DNA of 64,000 nt, taken from Paragordius varius (Eukaryota; Animalia; Nematomorpha). The stretch spans positions 9,858,001 to 9,922,000 of the forward strand of contig OZ176051.1 of NCBI GenBank assembly GCA_964247055.1, given 5' to 3'. The translations under genes and the position numbers were made by a program. A model generated the notes under the pieces. The model did not search any database, was not told the DNA's origin, and was given only the letters and a program-made list of their open reading frames with translations. Below are positions 10,528 through 21,048 of this stretch, one piece after another (position 1 is the stretch's first letter; each line of letters begins with the position of its first letter).

Positions 10528-11812
10528 ATAATAATACTCTTTTATGATAGTAAGATTTGAGCCATGTTAAAAAAATTGCCACCATAACAGGCAACACAAC
10601 CGAAACAGTAGATATTCTTTACAGCAATTTGAACTCCTTTTTTTTCCTTTCTGTTATCTTACAATTAATTATACAGATAAATAAGAAATTAATTTAAGGT
10701 ATCCGTAAAAACGGGACTGCTCAATACGAATATTTTACGGTGATTAGCAGTTATTACCCCTAGTTTTATTATAATTATGATAATATCTAAATATTAATAT
10801 CTGCAAAATAATAAATATTTAACGCAACCGAATTATTATTAAACGAAAAATATTTTATTCATTTGACCATCTCTATCCATTTTATTGATATTGTAAAAAG
10901 AAACCATTTCCTAACGGCGATATGTTAATTCAATTCTCTGATAAAAATTCATAATATGAAATGATTTTTGAATCGGACATGATGAAAAATGGATTTTGAA
11001 CGGACCCTGCTCTATCGGAATTAGGGAGAAAACGAAATTCTTAATTATGCGTTATCTTTTTTCACTTATTATGTGCAGGTAGCGCAATTTTCACCTTGTC
11101 ATTTGGTTTTTAAGATTATTTTAATTTCCTAACGAGTTATTTCAAAAGTCCAAGTTTGAATTGATTCATCATCGCAATTTTTCACATATTTAATGAGTGA
11201 AAAAATCTTTTTGAAATTTATTAACTTGGAAGTTTACGAAAAATTTACAAAAATATCTTTTGTTTTTGTCATAATATACGCAGTTAGGAATACAATATTA
11301 ATGACCGTAGCAAATAAACCAAAATGCACTTTTCAGCCTAAATTTTGCAAGTGTATTACAGTTTGCAAAATTTCGATATATTTAACAACGGGAAATGCAT
11401 AAATAGGAGAATATTGCCTATATATGACCAAAATCTGATAATAAGCAATGACGGTTTTTTCTACATGGATAAATTGCAAAGATAACATTTAACCTAATCG
11501 AATTGAAAAGAGTTAGTTCAAATAATTAGATTAGTTTTTAACAATTATGTTCTAGACATGTCTATTCACAAACCATTTTTTGATGGAAAAACAAATTTTT
11601 ACAACATATAAATAGACTACTGATTCTTTATATTATATGAAATTATTGATATAGAAACTTAAGTTGTATCTATATTTTAAACACCATAAATTTTAATGGA
11701 TCCAAGAAAATCACTCTTTATTTAGGTTAGCTATTTTTATTAATAGGATATCAAAATAAGATATATATTTATATTTGCATCCTATCAAATTATAAGATTA
11801 TCAAGTGATTAA

Positions 11813-14800
11813 TTAAATGTATCTTTTTAATTTTGAATCAGCGGCTGAAACCATAACTATGTTGCACCAAATATTGACAGATGTTCTAAGTCGATCCCTA
11901 TAATATATAGAAATTACAATTGAGGCGTAACAAAATTTGGGTTACGGTTGAACCTATAACTTCAAAATTTATTTTATATTATGTAATGCATATTGGGCAT
12001 TTAGCAAAATTTTAACACGTTTTTATATGATAACATTTTTAATACTTTAAATTTCGAGAAATAGCTCTTGCACGTTAATCATGCATTCTTATTATAGCAT
12101 ATAATTTTTAATATTTAAATTGTAAAATATAATTTATAACTAAACGATTGTCTTGTTGTTATGTATAAAAAAGGACCAAACTTTAGCAGTGGCGTACCGA
12201 GCATTTGCGACGCCCGGGGCATAAAACTCTTATAACGCCCCCCTCTTCTTTTTGAAAGCCAATAAAATTTGGTAAAACTGATTCTCCTGGGAATTTTTTT
12301 GGCTTTCTAGCACGGGTTGATATAGTAGAACCATCCCAGTTTTAACATATAATTTTAGCTTTTATATGGCTTCCTCGCAAAGTTGATTCCGAACATCTGA
12401 TAATTCAATGGTTAAGGATTCAAGATCCTTAAATTTGATTAAAATTAATTTTAGGATCTTGCAATTTATGTTGCCTATCGATTCTTCTAAGTATTTGATA
12501 CCAGAAAAAAATTAATGTTAAATTTAAAACACTCTGAAGTAAAACGGTTGCCTCACTTCTTTTTCACTAGTATTTGAAGTGTTACTTAAATCTTCTAATA
12601 ACTCTATCAAATCATCTATTCCCTCAATAATGACATTAACTGCTTGAATTCAGCACTCCATCGGGTTTATTTTTTATATGTTTCTTCTAATAGTTTAACG
12701 TGAAAATAAGATAGATATTTTCAATTATTCCGAAACAAGTCACAACAATAACATCTTGTTTTGCTACCCTGACTACTAAATTCAAGGAATGATTGTCACA
12801 ATTGACAAATATTGATCTTTTATTTTTTTCCAGAATGCCTAATATGTGACCCGACATCACAGCTGCATTCTCATAGCATTGAGATTTACAATTGATTTAG
12901 ATTTTCTAAAATTACCTTTTCAATTGAAATTGCATCTTTGTTGAATAACTGAAAAAAACCCATCAAGGTAATCAATAAACACATACCTGACAACAATTTT
13001 GTTGGTGGGCTATATCTGGCGTTAAATCAAATATAAGTCCATAATATTTACTTTTTTTATGTCATCGATCAATTTAGTTTTAACTCTTGAAGCTAAAAGA
13101 TGTTTAAATTCGTTGTGGATTTTGGGTGAAGCATAGGATTAAGTGTTAAGAGATTTAATGTTTCTCTTGTGTTCTCCCATTTTTGGGTCAAATTGAGCTA
13201 CAAGTTTTAGTAAACATAAGAAGTTTCTAGGATTTGGTGCTGAGTCATCTGAATACATTAAACTTTCAACATATCCTCGAAAAGGGAGATTTTCGGTGAT
13301 TAGAATTCATGCAAAATATTCGATGTAAAATATTTCGCCATCGATCTTCCGAGTGTATGTGAGCTTCTAGAGCATAATCGATTTCTTTTTTATTTATCAA
13401 GCTTCTTTCTGCCTCTTTCCATGTAGTAACCGATGATGGAGGCTATTTTCATGATTGATTAATTTATCTTTTTTCCTCCACTATTAAAACCATGCGTAGT
13501 TATAAAAGATGATGGTAAAGAAATAGATCGACCAAAAAGTAGGCAACGAAAACAATACGCAGATCTGTTCTTTATTGAATATAAAAGCCAAGACCTCTCA
13601 ACTTCAAATCCTTCTTTTTTACCGACACGAAAAACCAAGATTGGGGCATTGAACAATGATTTTTTGTTTCAAAGAGATTGCATTTATTTTGAAAGCCTCG
13701 AGATCCACGAATAATTAATCATTTCTGTGCGAAGTTGATTAGATATTACGGGAACATTATTAGTAAAAGGCGACACAATTAAACTCTATAGGTATAGCGC
13801 TTGGAACTACTAATGGTATATTTGTAGTTATTTCATCTCTAAACATTGGATCTCAATAAATAGAGTTTCCAGTGTTTTTAAGTTATTATTATAGAGGTAC
13901 CGTTATGTTTGTGTCGCACACACTCTTTTTAATTTTATGGTTAGATATTTCCGTTAAATAAGATTTCATACTCATTCGCATTTTATTGTTTCATTCTCCT
14001 TCTGGATTTTTCGTTTCCTATTAGCGTAACCGCTGAGTTTAGGCACTGATATCTGACAAAATGAAAGTATTATATAAGATACAAGGCTAGATTATTAATA
14101 AAAACATCTTGTTAGAGATGGAATGATCTTAGGAATTTAAATAAATGAAATTGGGTTTTGAAATTAAATATGATTAAAATATTGCAATTATAAATTATAA
14201 GAATAAGAGATAAGGTTTGAAAGAGAAGTCATATTAATTTAATAAAGGCATAAAAGAATTAACAATATGTGCGTGTAAAGAAACGGTTTTTTAAGCCAAA
14301 AAAAATTTGCACATGTTGAAGGGAGTACCTACATGAAAGTTGTTTTTTGCATAATGTTTGCTCTTGATATCATTCATATAATTTTATATTATTTTAGAGA
14401 TTATTACGTAAATTGCTGAAAAATCTTACTTGAAAGTTGCTATTAATTTTGCAATATTTATATTTAATTAAAAATCATTTAGGCGCCCCTAAATAACGGC
14501 GCCCGGAGCATGATGCACCCCCTTAACCCCCCCCCCCCCCCCCCCTCGGTACGCCACTGAACTTTAGCTCATTTGCATCTTAAACTTTAATTTAATAAAC
14601 ATTTAGTGATCTTGGTAGCTTTATACCCGGGGTTATTTGTTTAACTAACTAAAAAACTATTATTAGTATTGAGCCAAATATATTAATATGCTTTCTTTAG
14701 CCTTATAGACGTAAAATACAAAAAACCTAAAAATGTAAAATCCTCACCTCAAACTTTTTCGACGCCATTTTTCTTTAAATTTTTGAATCGCTATGCAGGA

Positions 14801-16252
14801 TTAATGTATATCATGATAAGAAAACGTAAGTAACTTTAATTTGGCTGATATTTAATACAATAAATATCTTTAACTGAAATGGAAAAAGATGAATTACGGC
14901 AAATATGAAAAATATAATATTATTTTTTACAAAAGCCAATCAACCACAATCACACTATCAATGGCTGATTTGGGGAGGCTCGATACTTCGATTACAATCC
15001 CAGCAGCTGTAATTCCTGCAAAAGGAATCCCCGCTGTTCCCATGCTAATTGCAGTTGCCGTTACTCTGTTTTGATATGGAAAATAGAGCTATCCATATAT
15101 TTTTTATAAACAAAGTTTGCTATTAAAATTTAAATTTTCTATTGATTCAATAATAAAAGTAATAAAAAGAAAGATATGGATATGCTTACACAATTGTAAT
15201 AAGTTGTGAGATGGATAAAACATGCCCAATTTTTTTAGCTGCAAAACAAGCCACAAACACTATGAAAAATGTTGTACCATTTTTGTTGAGAATGTTACCA
15301 AAGGTACAAGCAAATTGTGAAATGCGTGAATCGACATCTGTGTCAATGCACGCTTTTATAGTGTAAGGAAGGCAAGAAGTGCTATCATAAAAAATTTATA
15401 TAAAATTAATTTTATCGTCTAACAAAACCGTATTTTTTGCAGAATAAGTTAATTTGGCCCTATAAGCACCTATATGAGATATTTGAATAATGATTTGTCA
15501 ATGCACTTCGGTATATATATTTTTATTCATAAACAAAAGTTTTTGAAATGGAGTAAATTGCCAAAGTGTGTTTTTCAATCATATTTGTCATGTCTGCCAA
15601 ACACCTGTGCCTCATAAATCACGCAATAAGACACGTAAAATTTGGTCTAACCCTTTAAACGTTGGATGAAACAGTAAAATTAGTTATACTTAGCGTTTTC
15701 GACTGGTTATGAATCTCTTTATGACCACATTGTAAAATTTTATAAGCATAAGCAGTAAAAAACCTTTAAAGATATTTAACGCCTGGTATAAAGTTTAATG
15801 GTAAAATAATGAAAATTCTGGAAATTAAGATTTTATCCTAATGTTTTTTGTGGAATTTAATATATAATGACCATTTATTAGATTAGTAATTTTGTTCATT
15901 TTTAGATTCTGCTTGGTTATGTAACTGACTGTATTTATCTAACTTTTTGATTCGTCAAAAACCTAAGTCTAGTCATAAGTTTGAAAAATATTTTTTTTAC
16001 ATAAACATATATAGACCTAGAAGCCGTTGTTAAAGCGGTAATCAAAGCTTCTTTGGAGTTCATAAATAGTTTCCATGGTTTCCTCCTTATGAGAATTATG
16101 TAGGCTGAACAAATCCCTATGGTAGCAATGATTAGGAGGCCAAAAATATTGAGTAAAAGGGCAATCATTATATCCCAAGCCGCTAATTTGATGTCACGCG
16201 TGTGGGCAATCACTTTCTCCATAATTAAACAGAAATTACCAATCGGAGATAT

Positions 16253-16294
<42 letters not shown>

Positions 16295-19200
16295 ATTTAC
16301 AATTCAAATTGACCCTCGAACAAATCAAATTCACTGAACAATTCAAATTCACCCTCGAACAATTCAAATTCACCCCTGAACAATTCAGAATCAACCCTTG
16401 AACAATTTAAAATCACCCTATAATTTAATTATGTGTTTTTGGGATAGTGTTATTCATTATTAATAATATATTTTTACGACATATTTTATAATTTATTCAG
16501 CATTATATTAATTTTAACCCATATTTTATATAAAATAAGGTAGTTCTTAATCTTAAAAAACACCTAATTTATTTTAGGTTGAATGTGAATTGTTTAAAGG
16601 TGAATTTGAGTTGTAAATGGTATATATATATATATATATATATATATCAGGGGTGGCCACACTTTTTTTGTCGCGAGCTTTTTTTGGCTTTTTTGTTAAA
16701 AAAAGAGTTCGCGGTCACCCAGAAATATTTATCAAAAAAACTCAATCAACACTTTAAATGATGTATATACCTGCTTTACAGATTAGAGCGACTTGTTTAA
16801 ACCATTTTAAAATTGTAATTTTTTTATCTATCAACCAAATACAAAAATAATTTTAATTAAAAGACAACGGGTTATTAACTACCTTAATTTTTTAACCAAC
16901 ATAAAACACTTCAAAATATTTATTTATTAAATTTCTATTATATGAAATTTTACAATATAAAAATTTAAACAATGCATTTGAAATTACAGGGGAGAATACA
17001 TTATGATACAAAAAATAAAAGAAATAAAAAATAGCATTCCAATTATAACCATAATTTGAACATAAATAAGAGTACATTAAAATTGTATCAGTTTTAATTC
17101 TATCCACATATTTTTTAGTAAATCGGCTTTTTCCTAAGCGAAAATACAACTCGATAAACATCCATATTTAATAAAGAAAAAAATATTTAAAACGCCCGAC
17201 TGCGAAAAAATTCAGAAAGTTTATCTAAATTAGGTTCAAATGAAGTCAAAGCAATTCTCAAACATGATTCTAAATGTTTATTAGTTAATGACCTCTGTTT
17301 AGTTTTGATAGCATTCATAATTGAAAAAGCCGATTCACATAAATATGTGGATCCAAAAAAAGAATTGAATAATGCAGCGGTTTTCCAAATATGGGGGTAT
17401 TTATCTTTATTTATAAATTTATATATATCTGATCCTAATGATTTTAGATGGATATCGCATTTAACATTTATTAATTCCTCTTCCAACTCTGCTAAATTTG
17501 GTACACCAAGAAAGTGGCTGAGTTTTTGAGCAATATATTCAACATTATTATTATTATTAAATGGGCATGATAAAAAAATAGCGATGTCTCCAAGTTTATT
17601 TATAGATGAAAATCGTTTTTCAAAATCATTAATAAGCAGACCAATATCATCTGCATATTTTTCAAAAGAGAGATTCTCTATTTTTTCAGACACCGCTGCC
17701 AGATTAAAAAAATGTTTTATATCTCAGTTTTTTAATTGTGTTTCTACTACTGTTAGTGTTTCCTTAAAAGATTTTAAAGCACCCATCATATCCATTATTG
17801 TTTTATCTTTTCCTTGTAATTGGATGTTTAATTTATGCAATTTTTCCGTGATATCGCATAAAAATGCAAGATCAAGCAGCCAATCTTGATCTTTCAATTC
17901 AGGGTATGAAAATTTAGAATTCTCTAAAAAAATTTCTATTTGTGGTAAAAGTTGCCTAAATCTAATTAAAAATGCGGCACGACTCAACCACCTTACATCA
18001 GTATGTAATAAAAGTTCTCCATATTCCACGCCGCATTCATTTAACAAAATTCGAAATTGGCGGCGGGACAAGCTTTTTGTTCGAATGGCGTTAACAATTT
18101 TAAAACAGGGGTTCATTACCTGATGGTATTTTAAAACTTTTGAACATAAAACTTGATTATGGATTATACAATGGTAATCAATGAACTTGGGAAATGCACT
18201 GTGATTTTTACATAAAGCGATAAAGCCGTTGTTAACGCCAATCATAGCTGGAGCTCCATCAGTAGTTATAGATGCGAGTTTTACGATGGGAAGTTCGTAT
18301 CTGTGATAAATTTATAAAAAGAATCAAAAATATCCTGCCCTCTGGTTCGTTCGTGGAGAGGTATTATAGTTAATAATTCCTCCTTTGCAGATAAATCACT
18401 AAATATCATACGAATAAAAATGCATAATTGGGCGATTCCAACATAATCAGTGGACTCATCGAGTTGCAAGGAAAAAAAATACAGTTATTAATATTTTCAT
18501 GTAAAATTTCATCAAGATTATTACTAATATCTTCAGCCATGCGCATAACGGTATTTCTCTATAAGCTTATGCTTTTAATAGCTGTCATAATATTATTTTT
18601 GTTATCAAAATTTTCAAATAAAATATCACAAGCGCTAATAAAGGCTTCTTTAAATATTTCACCATCTTGGAATGGCTTATTGTTCCGAATGAGTATTTCC
18701 GCTACCTTGAATGAAGCAATCGCAGCATTTTTATAGTCTTTGTTGTATTTAAGTATGCTATTTTGTGAGGCGGATAATTGTTCTTTTAATTCCTTTACTT
18801 TAATGTTGCGTTCTTGAGTTTGTAAGGGGTAGTTTTTGGAGTAATGTGGATGCAGAGATCTATAATGTCTTTCAATATTTGACTTTTTGGGCAAAGCAAC
18901 AGTACTATTGCATATTAGACAGGTGCATGTTTCATTTATCATAATAAAAAAGTATTCATGCTCCCAATCTTTCTTGTATCTGTACAACTTTTTTGGATTC
19001 TAAAATATAAGTTTTAAAAACCTACTTTTGGTGTATCAAATCAAATCTAACTTCACGATTATGCTTCTGATTTATGAATAAGCTTTGCTCAAAGTTTTGA
19101 TATATTCAAGGGAAATGACTGATTTTAAGTTTTAATGCAAAGCTTCAAAACATATGAATTATAATTAATAAAATAATTTTTTTACACCCTTTTCTTAGAC

Positions 19201-19431: not shown

Positions 19432-21048
19432 TTCTATCTTGTTACTCCTTTAAAAACCAATTTTTTACCACATAATATAATTGGCCATTTGCATTAACAT
19501 AGTATTGGCTGCAAGGAGTATATCAATGAGTGGTTTTGCCCTGACATCAAACGTCGAAAGTGTCACCCCAAACATCATGGCAACCGTGAGGATTCCAAAT
19601 AGATTTGGCCTTGCGGCTGAACCATTTTTTATTTCAATTTTTTCCACTAAGAAAAAAATTGTTGGTTTCAAAATTATTGATATAGAGTCAAATACTAGGA
19701 TTTTTGACCCGATTATAGAAATAAGAATTATTTATCCAACAAAACATTCAAAAATTTATGCATACCAAAATTTTTAAAAATATTTTTGTAATTATAATTG
19801 ACAAAATAATAAAATACATTGATCAGTTAATGCAATAACTGATTTATTTTCAGGCAGGCTTTGAAAAAATTGTAATTATTACCGGATTTATTTAAACTTG
19901 GGGACCAAACGCTTGTTTTTTTAACATCGGTTTTAAACTATTTTATTAATTATACATGGATAATTTTACTTGACGGAAAAACACTGTGATACAATGGTCT
20001 GGCATCAAATTTCTACAAAATATCAGTGAAAAAATTTATAAATCAAGCTTGATAAAATGCATTTTTGTTAAATTATCTTTTAAATTTAATCCACACCAAA
20101 TCAATCGAAAACAAATTATCACCTAAAAATGTCATAAAAGATATCGGCGACAACCCATTCTTGCGTAATTATGGCAGGTTTGAGCATTGGATTCAACGCA
20201 TAAATTGGTGATAAAAGTATATTGTAAAATAGGGAAAATATGCAAACGCAAAAACTGGAAATAAGGCACCAAGCCAGAAGCCACAAAGCTATTTTGCCAG
20301 AAAATTGTGCCGTGAACCGGCCCAAACTCACCAACAAATTTAGGAATACTAATGGAATGGAGATGAAATTCAATATGGCTATAAATAGCTGTCCGGGGAG
20401 AGCGATGAAGCGTTTTACCCGAATATCCAACTCTGGTTCTGTAATGTAAAATATGCCCCCTACATACGAAAAAAAAATAAAAGTGTGTGTTTGTGATAAA
20501 GTTTTATAGAATAATTACAACAGCATAATATCCAAAACTATATCGAATTTCCGATATGCAATTTTAATTTTGGCTTAGTAATTAACACACATTTAACAAG
20601 GACTTTTCTTAAAATTTTTAAATACTATGATTATTAATCAAAATGTCAAAAGGGGAGGTGATTGGCCAATTTTTTTATCATTTTAGATAAAATTTTAAAA
20701 AAAGGTTAAACTTTTACGATGGTTTTAGGAAATTTTCTAATAAAGTATTCAAAAAAATATTTTAATCATGAAATTTTAAATGCAAATATATTATAACTCA
20801 AATATTACAAATTTAACTTTATAATATTATTTGAATGATCGAAAACATTAAAAAATAAAGAATTAATAATTACCGATAAAAACTGTACATATTAAGCTGA
20901 TATACAGTAATCTATCCTGGTGCTTTAATGAATTGATACAATATGTTTTAACAGATGAGATTGACATAATTCGAAAAGTGTGTTCTAAAATTTTAAGGGA
21001 TACACAAAAAGAAAAATAGTTAATATATTCCTGACAAAAATCATCCAT
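11813..21048 (-). CDS. SLC1-family (EAAT/ASCT-like) amino-acid transporter, 9 exons
   Basis: Exons approx 21048-20874, 20459-20123, 20012-19970, 19937-19883, 19646-19469, 16253-16017, 15381-15196, 15066-14931, 11897-11813, joined at GT-AG sites. Motifs: LPGQLF..IPL, NLFGI..FG, IMW-ISPIG, TTASS..LP (HP1), NKNGT (TM7), ATAISMGTAGIP (HP2), VDWLLDRLRTSVN (TM8). The start codon and the exon 7/8 junction are uncertain. Confidence 0.9.
12187..14559 (-). mobile_element. hAT element with decayed, internally deleted ZMYM1/TTF-zinc-finger-type transposase, in the last SLC1 intron
   Basis: Perfect 15-bp TIR CAGTGGCGTACCGAG...CTCGGTACGCCACTG. Exact 8-bp TSD AACTTTAG. Remnant peptides RSWLLYS..AYCFRCLLF, NFLCLLKLVAQFDP and VNCDNHSLNLV on the minus strand. 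Confidence 0.9.
16293..16620. mobile_element. MITE family A, copy 2, inserted in a (TA)n tract
   Basis: TA|CCATTTACAATTCAAATT...GAGTTGTAAATGG|TA, with about six 20-bp subterminal units at the left end. Confidence 0.85.
16648..19375 (-). mobile_element. Full-length hAT (Charlie/SPIN-like) DNA transposon in an SLC1 intron
   Basis: 12-bp TIR CAGGGGTGGCCA...TGGCCACCCCTG. Flanked by ATATATAT on both sides, compatible with an 8-bp TSD inside a microsatellite. Confidence 0.92.
17187..18987 (-). pseudogene. hAT transposase of the GTF2IRD2/EPM2AIP1 type, with 2 nonsense codons and 2 single-base frameshifts
   Basis: N-terminal CLIC...RHY..H finger, LQLDESTD, TDGAPAM, HCIIH, RWLSR and the FGSTYLCESAFS dimerisation motif. 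Stops at 18559-18561 and 17724-17726. Frameshifts near 18475 and 18290. Confidence 0.9.

What the first reader, a model, noticed from the sequence alone, without database searches (positions are those of the whole stretch)
11813..15381. SLC1 transporter with a rewritten cation-coupling site (NMDGT to NKNGT, TM8 Asp to Asn, TM7 Glu to Ile)
Seen in sequence: TM7 reads ILNKNGTTFFI and TM8 reads DRLRTSVNIWCN. Established: SLC1 members have NMDGTALYE and DRxRTxxNxxGD, where the NMD Asp and the last TM8 Asp (GltPh D312, D405) bind Na+, the TM7 Glu is the EAAT proton/K+ site, and the TM8 Arg selects acidic substrates. Here both Na+-site aspartates are Asn, the Glu is lost, the Met is replaced by Lys, and the substrate Asp/Arg are kept. 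Inference: this may be a Na+-independent or differently coupled Asp/Glu carrier in which the Lys stands in for a cation, as seen in some LeuT-fold transporters. That would be a plausible nutrient-scavenging adaptation in a parasite.
Basis: partly seen in the sequence, partly recalled or inferred. Interest (0 to 1): 0.72.

Follow-up and report, generated by a model that had tools for sequence, protein, structure and literature searches.

The report
Glutamate-transporter relative with rewritten sodium sites
An intact gene for a glutamate-transporter-family (SLC1) protein, shared with a horsehair worm, has replaced the key residue at each of the family's three sodium-binding sites, so it probably moves amino acids without the usual sodium drive, though neither its expression nor its function was tested here.

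Summary
On the minus strand, TM7 reads NKNGT (15287-15273) and TM8 reads DRLRTSVNIWCN (11896-11861). Canonical SLC1 proteins have NMDGT and DRxRTxxNxxGD.

The finding's coordinates cover only the last three exons. The whole gene has 9 GT-AG exons (20967-11813) and encodes 451 aa without a stop.

It is not decay:
- A Gordionus (Nematomorpha) ortholog is 70% identical and keeps NKNGT and DRIRTSVNIWSN. Synonymous sites are saturated (pS 0.83, pN 0.17).
- A second intact paralog in this genome is only 29% identical, yet keeps NKNGT and the TM8 Asn. Its substrate Arg is Leu.
- The three proteins form one long-branched clade inside the animal EAATs.
- Three other SLC1 genes in this genome are canonical at these TM7/TM8 positions.

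All three Na+ sites are altered: Na3 (Asp to Asn), Na1 (Asp to Asn) and Na2 (Met to Lys). Published GltPh data show that D405N allows aspartate binding without Na+ and that D312N abolishes Na3 binding.

Best reading: an acidic-amino-acid carrier that is Na+-independent or differently coupled, with the Lys ammonium possibly filling Na2. This mechanism is inferred. No RNA run held the gene, so expression is unshown. No paper in the library describes the motif.

The parts
20874..20967 (-). Exon 1: start ATG at 20967-20965, short N-terminus and the start of TM1. The donor is GT.
   Evidence: The start aligns with the start of the Gordionus model P0001.
20123..20459 (-). Exon 2: end of TM1, then TM2 and TM3. 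It holds W95 (20271-20269) and S99/S100 (20259-20254). S99/S100 correspond to GltPh T92/S93, the hydroxyl ligands of Na3, which are retained here.
   Evidence: Pfam SDF profile positions 21-98; alignments; splice sites.
19970..20012 (-). Exon 3 (43 nt), reading RNLMPDHCITVFFRQ (TM4a region).
   Evidence: colinear with P0001.
19883..19937 (-). Exon 4 (55 nt), reading FKTDVKK..., preceded by a 32-nt GT-AG intron (19969-19938).
   Evidence: Without this exon the frame breaks. With it the ORF is continuous and matches the Gordionus FKTDVKK.
19469..19646 (-). Exon 5: TM4c and the start of TM5.
   Evidence: Pfam SDF positions 129-179.
16017..16253 (-). Exon 6: TM5, TM6 and the first arm of HP1. The acceptor lies directly after a (TA)19 microsatellite.
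   Evidence: Pfam SDF positions 175-254.
15190..15381 (-). Exon 7: HP1 tip (SSTSCLP), then TM7 with the motif NKNGT (15287-15273; K348 at 15284-15282, N349 at 15281-15279). I355 (15263-15261) sits where EAATs have the proton-acceptor Glu.
14931..15065 (-). Exon 8: HP2. The tip reads GTAGIPFAG, against the canonical GAAGIPQAG.
   Evidence: Pfam SDF positions 321-365.
11813..11897 (-). Exon 9: TM8, reading DRLRTSVNIWCN. Residues are D425 (11896-11894), R428 (11887-11885), N432 (11875-11873) and N436 (11863-11861). N436 sits where Na+-coupled members have Asp. The stop TAA is at 11815-11813.
11736..11741 (-). AATAAA, 72 nt downstream of the stop; a possible polyadenylation signal (inference only).
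   Evidence: Read directly from the sequence.

Best explanation
This is a functional, lineage-specific (horsehair-worm) member of the SLC1 glutamate/aspartate transporter family. It keeps the elevator fold and the amino-acid binding residues, but the key residue of each of the three canonical Na+ sites has been replaced. At Na3 the NMD Asp is Asn349. At Na1 the TM8 Asp is Asn436. At Na2 the Met ligand is Lys348. The EAAT proton/K+ Glu is Ile355.

The most likely working model has four parts:
1. The two Asn residues mimic the charge-neutralised, Na+-occupied Na1 and Na3 sites.
2. The Lys ammonium sits in or next to the carbonyl cage of Na2, under HP2.
3. Substrate binding and gate closure therefore no longer need 3 Na+.
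4. The substrate would be an acidic amino acid, because D425, R428, T429 and N432 are kept. The protein would act as a Na+-independent facilitator or exchanger, or as a carrier coupled in another way.

Shown here: the gene is intact, the changes are conserved under purifying selection, and the fold is SLC1. Inferred: loss of Na+ coupling, the role of the Lys, and the substrate. The confidence given is for the whole statement. That the gene is real, intact and selected I put at about 0.9, loss or rewiring of canonical Na+ coupling at about 0.65, and the Lys as a Na2 surrogate at about 0.3.
For: Gene and family:
- 9 GT-AG exons give a 451-aa ORF.
- Pfam SDF matches the exons in profile order.
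- The ortholog P0001 matches EAAT1 at E = 1.8e-49.
- Its AF2 model has pTM 0.74, and TM7 is broken exactly at N-K.
- That model has TM-scores of 0.80-0.84 to outward-facing ASCT2 and EAAT3.

Selection:
- Gordionus is 70% identical, with the same NKNGT and DRIRTSVNIWSN.
- pN is 0.17 against a saturated pS of 0.83 over 399 codons.
- Many synonymous codon differences lie inside the motifs, including the TM8 Asn (AAC here, AAT in Gordionus).
- A second intact paralog is 29% identical and keeps NKNGT and the TM8 Asn.
- The three proteins form one clade (SH-aLRT 100) on a stem of 2.28 changes per site.
- Of the 15 clade-specific changes at otherwise invariant columns, 7 lie in or next to TM7 (336-356), one is in TM3 (W95) and one is the TM8 Asn436.
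- The three other SLC1 genes of this genome keep NMDGT and the last TM8 Asp.

Mechanistic precedent:
- The Met is a ligand of Na2, and Na3 is formed by T92, S93, N310 and D312 (PMC5110648; PMC8431971).
- GltPh D405N binds Asp without Na+ and 'mimics Na1-bound'; D312N abrogates Na3 binding.
- H+-coupled members carry D405N and M311L, as read directly in E. coli DctA (NLDGT, TNLVGN).
- Basic side chains act as Na+ surrogates in ApcT (K158), CaiT (R262) and LaINDY (R159, H392) (PMC11782487).

Own inference:
- The loaded site has the same net charge as GltPh with 3 Na+ (two Asp/Na+ pairs removed, one Na+ replaced by Lys).
- The Lys N-zeta lies about two bonds beyond the position of the Met sulfur, which is roughly where Na2 sits.
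Against: - There is no transport, binding or expression evidence. No RNA run held the gene.
- In GltPh, D312N alone abolishes the NMDGT conformational switch, so a non-transporting protein cannot be excluded.
- The Met side chain also touches the substrate, so the Lys may be a substrate ligand and not an ion surrogate.
- The Na3 hydroxyls S99/S100 and N347 are retained, so some cation could still bind.
- The clade is enriched in residues favoured by AT-rich codons (F, Y, M, I, N, K: 0.36-0.37 against 0.27-0.30 in the canonical paralogs). D to N and M to K go in the direction of AT mutational pressure.
- The structure model is of the ortholog without TM8, and side-chain positions could not be inspected.
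Confidence: 0.5

Rival explanations
1. It is a proton-coupled symporter, like bacterial GltP and DctA. A new protonatable group, for example Lys348 with a depressed pKa, would carry the H+.
For: Asn at the D405 position is a signature of H+-coupled members (PMC12668577), and E. coli DctA reads TNLVGN. The ApcT Lys is proposed to cycle its protonation.
Against: Three of the four signature positions of the bacterial H+-coupled type are not met. The T92 position stays hydroxylic (S99). The Met is Lys, not Leu. The putative protonation site S279E is Thr here. The EAAT proton-acceptor Glu is Ile. No acidic residue has been gained near the site.
Confidence: 0.15
2. The Lys is a new substrate ligand. 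The clade has changed what it carries, for example to a more anionic or different small molecule, and ion coupling is merely weakened.
For: The Met side chain makes van der Waals contact with bound aspartate (PMC12668577). The second paralog has lost the substrate Arg (Leu) but keeps the Lys. The residues LP-GAT before the motif and ALY after it are also rewritten.
Against: D425, R428, T429 and N432, together with the HP1 and HP2 tips, are kept in the window gene and in Gordionus. That argues for an ordinary alpha-amino acid with an acidic side chain. Both Na-site Asp residues are lost as well, which a change of substrate alone does not explain.
Confidence: 0.15
3. It is no longer a carrier. 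It could be a substrate-gated or constitutive anion channel, a sensor, or a protein under relaxed constraint whose site drifted under AT mutational pressure.
For: The branches are very long (stem 2.28; the C4b tip 2.19). Residues favoured by AT-rich codons are enriched. GltPh D312N loses the NMDGT switch. There is no expression evidence.
Against: Purifying selection is strong between the two species. The derived K, N and N are kept across a path of about 3.6 changes per site between the paralogs. The substrate-binding residues and hairpins are kept.
Confidence: 0.12
4. It is a pseudogene, or an assembly or sequencing artefact.
For: An element repeated in very high copy lies in intron 8, and decayed hAT-like ORFs lie in intron 5. 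No RNA support was found.
Against: The ORF is complete with nine canonical splice pairs. DNA contigs cover the exons with no alternative letter among the printed rows. The same motifs are present in another species' genome. pN is far below pS.
Confidence: 0.02

Closest known systems
Animal EAATs (SLC1A1-3, 6, 7), for example human EAAT1 and EAAT3
   Same: Same family and fold. The ortholog matches EAAT1 at E = 1.8e-49 and has TM-score about 0.8 to outward-facing EAAT3 and ASCT2. It is nested inside the metazoan EAAT clade. HP1, HP2, the TM8 Asp/Arg/Thr/Asn substrate residues and the TM3 hydroxyl pair are kept.
   Different: NMDGT is replaced by NKNGT. The last TM8 Asp is Asn. The proton/K+ Glu is Ile and the neighbouring Tyr is Phe. 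There is no long TM4b-c loop and almost no C-terminal tail. Identity is only 28-30%.
Bacterial H+-coupled members (E. coli DctA, GltP) and their signature of T92-hydrophobic, M311L, D405N and S279E
   Same: Asn at the D405 position and loss of the Met. These are natural SLC1 members that work without Na+.
   Different: DctA keeps the NMD Asp (NLDGT), has Leu rather than Lys, has Val at the T92 position and Glu at the S279 position. None of these holds here.
GltPh D405N and D312N mutants, and the reconstructed uncoupled ancestor AncInt
   Same: D405N lets aspartate bind without Na+. AncInt reaches the high-affinity state without Na+. These are experimental precedents for ion-independent substrate binding in this fold.
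   Different: They are engineered or reconstructed prokaryotic proteins. D312N alone disables GltPh. None of them carries a Lys at the Met position, and no M-to-K mutant was found in the searched literature.
Basic side chains acting as tethered Na+ surrogates: ApcT K158 and CaiT R262 (LeuT fold), LaINDY R159/H392 (an elevator-type DASS)
   Same: A Lys, Arg or His occupies a position that is a Na+ site in Na+-coupled homologs, and the transporter is Na+-independent (PMC11782487).
   Different: The folds and families are different. Here the position of the Lys in the Na2 site is only inferred.
Other natural variants of the motif found here: teleost 'EAAT3-like' proteins (Labrus NKDGT, Poecilia NKNGT), P0039 (NKNGA), and NMNGT in Gnathostoma, Chironomus and Xenentodon
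   Same: They show independent M-to-K and/or D-to-N changes in the NMDGT motif.
   Different: Every one of these whose TM8 could be read keeps the TM8 Asp (GD); the Poecilia sequence is a 110-aa fragment without TM8, and no TM8 motif was matched for the Chironomus proteins. They are not related to the horsehair-worm clade on the tree. Only this clade changes all three sites.

Membership tests
SLC1 / DAACS (Pfam PF00375, SDF) | Sequence match to the family profile along the whole protein | tested here: met
   Five of six exon pieces match consecutive SDF profile positions 21-365. The genome scan gives the same result. The ortholog matches EAAT1 at E = 1.8e-49. The 27-aa TM8 exon alone is too short to score but aligns by position.
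SLC1 / DAACS (Pfam PF00375, SDF) | Fold with two re-entrant hairpins and a TM7 helix broken at the N-x-x motif | tested here: met
   Tested on the Gordionus ortholog, which lacks TM8. The AF2 model has pLDDT 78 and pTM 0.74, with a helix break at N346-K347 and hairpins at 302-327 and 371-405. TM-scores to ASCT2 and EAAT3 are 0.80-0.84. The joined window protein itself was not folded.
Na+-coupled SLC1 (EAAT, ASCT, GltPh/GltTk type) | Asp of NMDGT (GltPh D312), the carboxylate of Na3 | tested here: not met
   Asn349 (AAT, 15281-15279). The same holds in Gordionus and in the second paralog.
Na+-coupled SLC1 (EAAT, ASCT, GltPh/GltTk type) | Met of NMDGT (GltPh M311), a ligand of Na2 that is conserved in all known Na+-coupled members (PMC8431971) | tested here: not met
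   Lys348 (AAA, 15284-15282), conserved in all three clade members.
Na+-coupled SLC1 (EAAT, ASCT, GltPh/GltTk type) | Last TM8 Asp (GltPh D405), the only side-chain ligand of Na1 | tested here: not met
   Asn436 (AAC, 11863-11861). Gordionus has AAT (Asn) and the paralog also has Asn.
Na+-coupled SLC1 (EAAT, ASCT, GltPh/GltTk type) | TM3 hydroxyl pair (GltPh T92/S93), and N310 and N401 | tested here: met
   S99/S100, N347 and N432 are present. In the second paralog the pair is Cys-Thr.
EAAT subfamily (H+ co-transport, K+ counter-transport, acidic substrates) | TM7 Glu, the proton acceptor (EAAT3 E374); this residue equivalence rests on my own knowledge | tested here: not met
   Ile355 in the window gene and in Gordionus, Tyr in the paralog. 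Canonical sequences read ALYE at this place.
EAAT subfamily (H+ co-transport, K+ counter-transport, acidic substrates) | TM8 Asp and Arg that bind the substrate amino group and side-chain carboxylate (GltPh D394, R397) | tested here: met
   D425 and R428 are kept here and in Gordionus. The second paralog has Leu at the Arg position.
Bacterial H+-coupled GltP/DctA type | Signature of T92-hydrophobic, M311L, D405N and S279E (PMC12668577) | tested here: not met
   Only D405N is shared. Here the positions read Ser99, Lys348 and Thr at the S279 position. E. coli DctA shows Val, Leu, Asn and Glu.
ASCT-type neutral amino-acid exchangers | The substrate Arg of TM8 is replaced by a small neutral residue (own knowledge; the PDB title 6rvx names ASCT2 mutant C467R without giving its position) | tested here: not met
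   Arg428 is retained in the window gene. The second paralog (Leu) would meet this single feature.

The most novel reading that the evidence does not exclude
This would be a natural SLC1 elevator transporter that needs no co-transported cation. Two Asn residues would freeze Na1 and Na3 in a 'bound-like' neutral state, and a tethered Lys ammonium would occupy the Na2 carbonyl cage and latch HP2. It would be the first example in this family of a side chain replacing a coupling ion, evolved once in horsehair worms and kept in two paralogs with different substrate residues (Arg versus Leu).
Probability: 0.3. Interest if true: 0.82.

Novelty: new variant of a known kind. Interest (0 to 1): 0.62.

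Why it matters
Ion coupling in glutamate transporters is an active structural question. A 2025 study needed ancestral reconstruction to obtain an uncoupled form.

This clade offers a ready-made natural experiment, maintained by selection, in which all three Na+ sites are altered while the substrate site is kept. There are two paralogs and an ortholog to compare. Reverting or transplanting the three residues would directly test how much of Na+ coupling resides in them, and whether a Lys can replace Na2.

Biologically, horsehair worms take up nutrients across the body wall while inside an insect (own knowledge). A carrier that does not depend on a Na+ gradient could be part of that lifestyle, but this is speculation.

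Tried and rejected
1. My first gene model (8 exons) needed a non-canonical splice between 19969 and 19647. The Gordionus protein showed a missing 55-nt exon (FKTDVKK) behind a 32-nt intron. With it, all nine junctions are GT-AG.
2. The TM8 exon alone against PDB sequences found no SLC1 match. It is too short, and the only hits were chance matches to superoxide dismutase.
3. On expression, the run search found no RNA holder. The guessed RNA runs of the same species hold next to none of the gene's words, and run X7 gave nothing on the exons. This is no evidence of silence, because those runs are tiny.
4. A profile search of 1.84 billion proteins with the two TM7 exons, and a word search with P0001, found one close relative only. 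Everything else is at most 30% identical.
5. The literature search found no paper with NKNGT in this sense. It found no Met-to-Lys mutant of an SLC1 transporter, and no hit linking Nematomorpha with amino-acid transporters.
6. Pseudogene and artefact readings were rejected (see the rival explanations).
7. A precise dN/dS was not possible because synonymous sites are saturated.
8. The joined (spliced) 451-aa protein was built only inside scripts, for local alignment, dN/dS and trees. The stored ortholog P0001 served as a stand-in, so TM8 is absent from the structure model.
Full report
**What is there.** The window is AT-rich eukaryotic DNA of about 27% GC. It lies at G000:C2:9858001-9922000 in a 110.5-Mb assembly. 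Stop-free pieces on that strand match the Pfam SDF (PF00375) profile in order, covering positions 21-98, 129-179, 175-254, 255-320 and 321-365. phmmer aligns the TM7 piece to EAAT1 residues 345-409, with NKNGT opposite NMDGT.

**Gene model.** Reading the splice sites gave a first model with one impossible junction. The closest database protein showed a missing 55-nt exon behind a 32-nt intron. The final model has nine exons, all GT-AG, at:
- 20967-20874
- 20459-20123
- 20012-19970
- 19937-19883
- 19646-19469
- 16253-16017
- 15381-15190
- 15065-14931
- 11897-11813

It encodes 451 aa with no internal stop. The finding's coordinates therefore cover only exons 7-9. Tiny introns are normal in this genome, as earlier notes s1-326688 and s1-373472 reported. 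The second paralog described below has six introns of 23-40 nt, all GT-AG. Intron 5 holds decayed hAT-like ORFs. Intron 8 holds an element repeated in very high copy: contig depth is 10^4-10^5 there, against about 400 on the exons.

**The changes are conserved, not decay.** A profile of the TM7 exon, searched against 1.84 billion proteins, found one strong hit, P0001. This is XP_065323689.1 of Gordionus sp. m RMFG-2023, a nematomorph. It is 70% identical to the window protein and carries the same ACTFGNILNKNGT. The RefSeq model stops at DWLL. I found its missing last exon in the genomic locus at L025:22376-22456, and it reads DRIRTSVNIWSN.

Over 399 aligned codons, pN is 0.17 while pS is 0.83, which is saturated. 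Inside the motifs the codons differ synonymously. For example, the derived TM8 Asn is AAC here and AAT in Gordionus.

The own genome has five SLC1 loci:
- Three are canonical at these TM7/TM8 positions (NMDGT and a last TM8 Asp).
- A second locus on C4, near 12.423 Mb, again reads NKNGT. I modelled it as seven exons and 437 aa, intact, with TM8 DRFLTIMNVYGN.
- No further NKNGT locus exists.

The two paralogs are only 29% identical. Even so, on a maximum-likelihood tree the three NKNGT proteins form one clade (SH-aLRT 100). The clade sits on a stem of 2.28 changes per site, nested among animal EAATs. Fifteen columns are invariant in the clade and differently invariant in canonical sequences. 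Seven of them lie in or next to TM7 (T to S336, LP to CT at 340/341, M to K348, D to N349, L to F353, A to V356). One is Y to W95 in TM3, and one is D to N436 in TM8. Keeping K, N and N over a path of about 3.6 changes per site is not expected for unconstrained positions. That last point is my own inference.

**Reads.** No listed run that holds the stretch is on record as RNA, and the guessed RNA runs of the same species hold next to none of its words. Laying four runs on 11800-16254 showed DNA contigs of X1 with zero differences over 11852-12231, 14527-14951, 15343-15835 and 16007-16254. Among the rows that were printed, no alternative letter falls in an exon. Run X7 gave nothing on the exons. 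Expression and splicing therefore remain unshown.

**Mapping to the known mechanism.**

| Site | Canonical ligands (GltPh numbering) | Source | Here |
|---|---|---|---|
| Na3 | T92, S93, N310, D312 | PMC5110648, | S99, S100, N347 kept; D312 is N349 |
| Na1 | Backbone carbonyls plus D405, its only side-chain ligand | | D405 is N436 |
| Na2 | HP2 and TM7a carbonyls plus the Met sulfur | | Met is K348 |
| Substrate | T314, D394, R397, N401 | | T351, D425, R428, N432, with identical spacing |

The HP1 and HP2 tips are also recognisable. The position of the EAAT proton-acceptor Glu is Ile355.

So the substrate site looks like that of an acidic-amino-acid carrier, while the key residue of each of the three cation sites is replaced. 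The second paralog additionally has Leu in place of the substrate Arg, which suggests a different, non-acidic substrate.

**Experimental precedent.** In GltPh, D405N binds aspartate in the absence of Na+ (KD about 11 µM) and is described as mimicking Na1 occupancy. D312N abrogates Na3 binding and abolishes the NMDGT switch (bioRxiv 10.1101/2021.11.29.470416).

H+-coupled bacterial members carry T92-hydrophobic, M311L, D405N and a putative protonation site S279E (PMC12668577). I read NLDGT and TNLVGN directly from E. coli dctA. The horsehair-worm clade shares only D405N with that solution.

Basic side chains replace Na+ in ApcT, CaiT and LaINDY (PMC11782487). No Met-to-Lys mutant of an SLC1 protein, and no mention of the NKNGT motif, was found in the searched literature.

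**Fold.** The Gordionus ortholog (without TM8) was folded with a 26-sequence alignment. The model has mean pLDDT 78 and pTM 0.74. TM7 breaks at N346-K347, and hairpins lie at 302-327 and 371-405. The best structural matches are outward-facing ASCT2 and EAAT3, at TM-score 0.80-0.84.

**Most likely mechanism (inference).** The two Asp-to-Asn changes remove the charges that Na1 and Na3 neutralise, and the Lys supplies the charge of Na2. The substrate-loaded site then has the same net charge as GltPh with three Na+. The Lys N-zeta extends about two bonds beyond where the Met sulfur sits, which is roughly the Na2 position. The protein would bind and move aspartate or glutamate without the 3 Na+ requirement, as a facilitator, an exchanger or a differently coupled carrier.

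The rivals are:
- proton coupling through the Lys;
- the Lys as a new substrate ligand;
- loss of carrier function, with drift under AT pressure (residues favoured by AT-rich codons make up 0.36-0.37 of the clade's proteins, against 0.27-0.30 in the canonical paralogs);
- pseudogene or artefact, which is essentially excluded.

**Novelty and verdict.** It is a member of SLC1. It is not of the Na+-coupled type by the defining ion-site residues, and it is not of the bacterial H+-coupled type either. Variants of the motif occur elsewhere: NKDGT and NKNGT in teleost 'EAAT3-like' proteins, NKNGA in P0039, and NMNGT in Gnathostoma, Chironomus and Xenentodon. Those whose TM8 could be read keep the TM8 Asp. 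This is a new variant of a known kind. It is well supported as a real, selected feature, but its function is untested.

Noticed in passing
G000:C4:12422973-12424468 (L022, minus strand): A second NKNGT-type SLC1 gene: 7 exons, introns of only 23-40 nt, intact at 437 aa. TM8 reads DRFLTIMNVYGN, so the substrate Arg is Leu and the Na3 pair is Cys-Thr. It may carry a non-acidic substrate.
   Followed up: partly
L025:22376-22456 (Gordionus sp. m, OX940783.2): The RefSeq model XP_065323689.1 ends at DWLL and lacks TM8. The missing last exon (DRIRTSVNIWSN...KIYL) lies about 590 nt downstream of the annotated end.
   Followed up: yes
window 19938-19969: There is a 32-nt GT-AG intron inside this gene. 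Together with the 23-40-nt introns of the paralog, it adds to the earlier notes on ultra-short introns in this genome.
   Followed up: partly
window 17190-18999 (minus-strand ORFs in intron 5): Decayed hAT-like transposon ORFs. They match the Spin-doc zinc finger (PF18658, E = 2e-10) and the hAT dimerisation region (PF05699, 21.1 bits, just under the cut-off), and are split over several frames.
   Followed up: partly
window 12098-14780 (intron 8): A repeat family in very high copy. Summed contig depth is 10^4-10^5 against about 400 on the flanking exons in run X1. It is also abundant in runs labelled as two other organisms (X5, X6). X5 also holds unique flanking sequence with zero differences (11836-12086, 15965-16129), so it may be the same species or an infected host.
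   Followed up: no
P0042, P0010, P0006, P0024, P0036 (teleost 'EAAT3-like' proteins: Labrus bergylta, Poecilia formosa, Xenentodon cancila): These fish SLC1 proteins have NKDGT, NKNGT or NMNGT. Where TM8 is present it reads DRxNT...GD, with the substrate Arg replaced by Asn. Labrus and Xenentodon group together on the tree (SH-aLRT 100). This is an independent Met-to-Lys change that appears uncharacterised.
   Followed up: no
P0018 (Gnathostoma spinigerum), P0021/P0043 (Chironomus riparius), P0039 (unnamed Logan contig): Further natural variants of the motif: NMNGT in the first two and NKNGA in P0039. Gnathostoma and P0039 have a canonical TM8 Asp; no TM8 motif was matched for the Chironomus proteins. 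Loss of the Na3 Asp seems to recur in animals.
   Followed up: no
G000:C4:564800-570200 (L020/L024): One of the three NMDGT-bearing SLC1 genes of this genome has TM8 DRFRAMTNVLSD, with Thr to Ala at the GltPh T398 position and Gly to Ser. It sits on a long branch (1.65).
   Followed up: no
window 16255-16292: A perfect (TA)19 microsatellite lies directly against the acceptor AG of exon 6.
   Followed up: no
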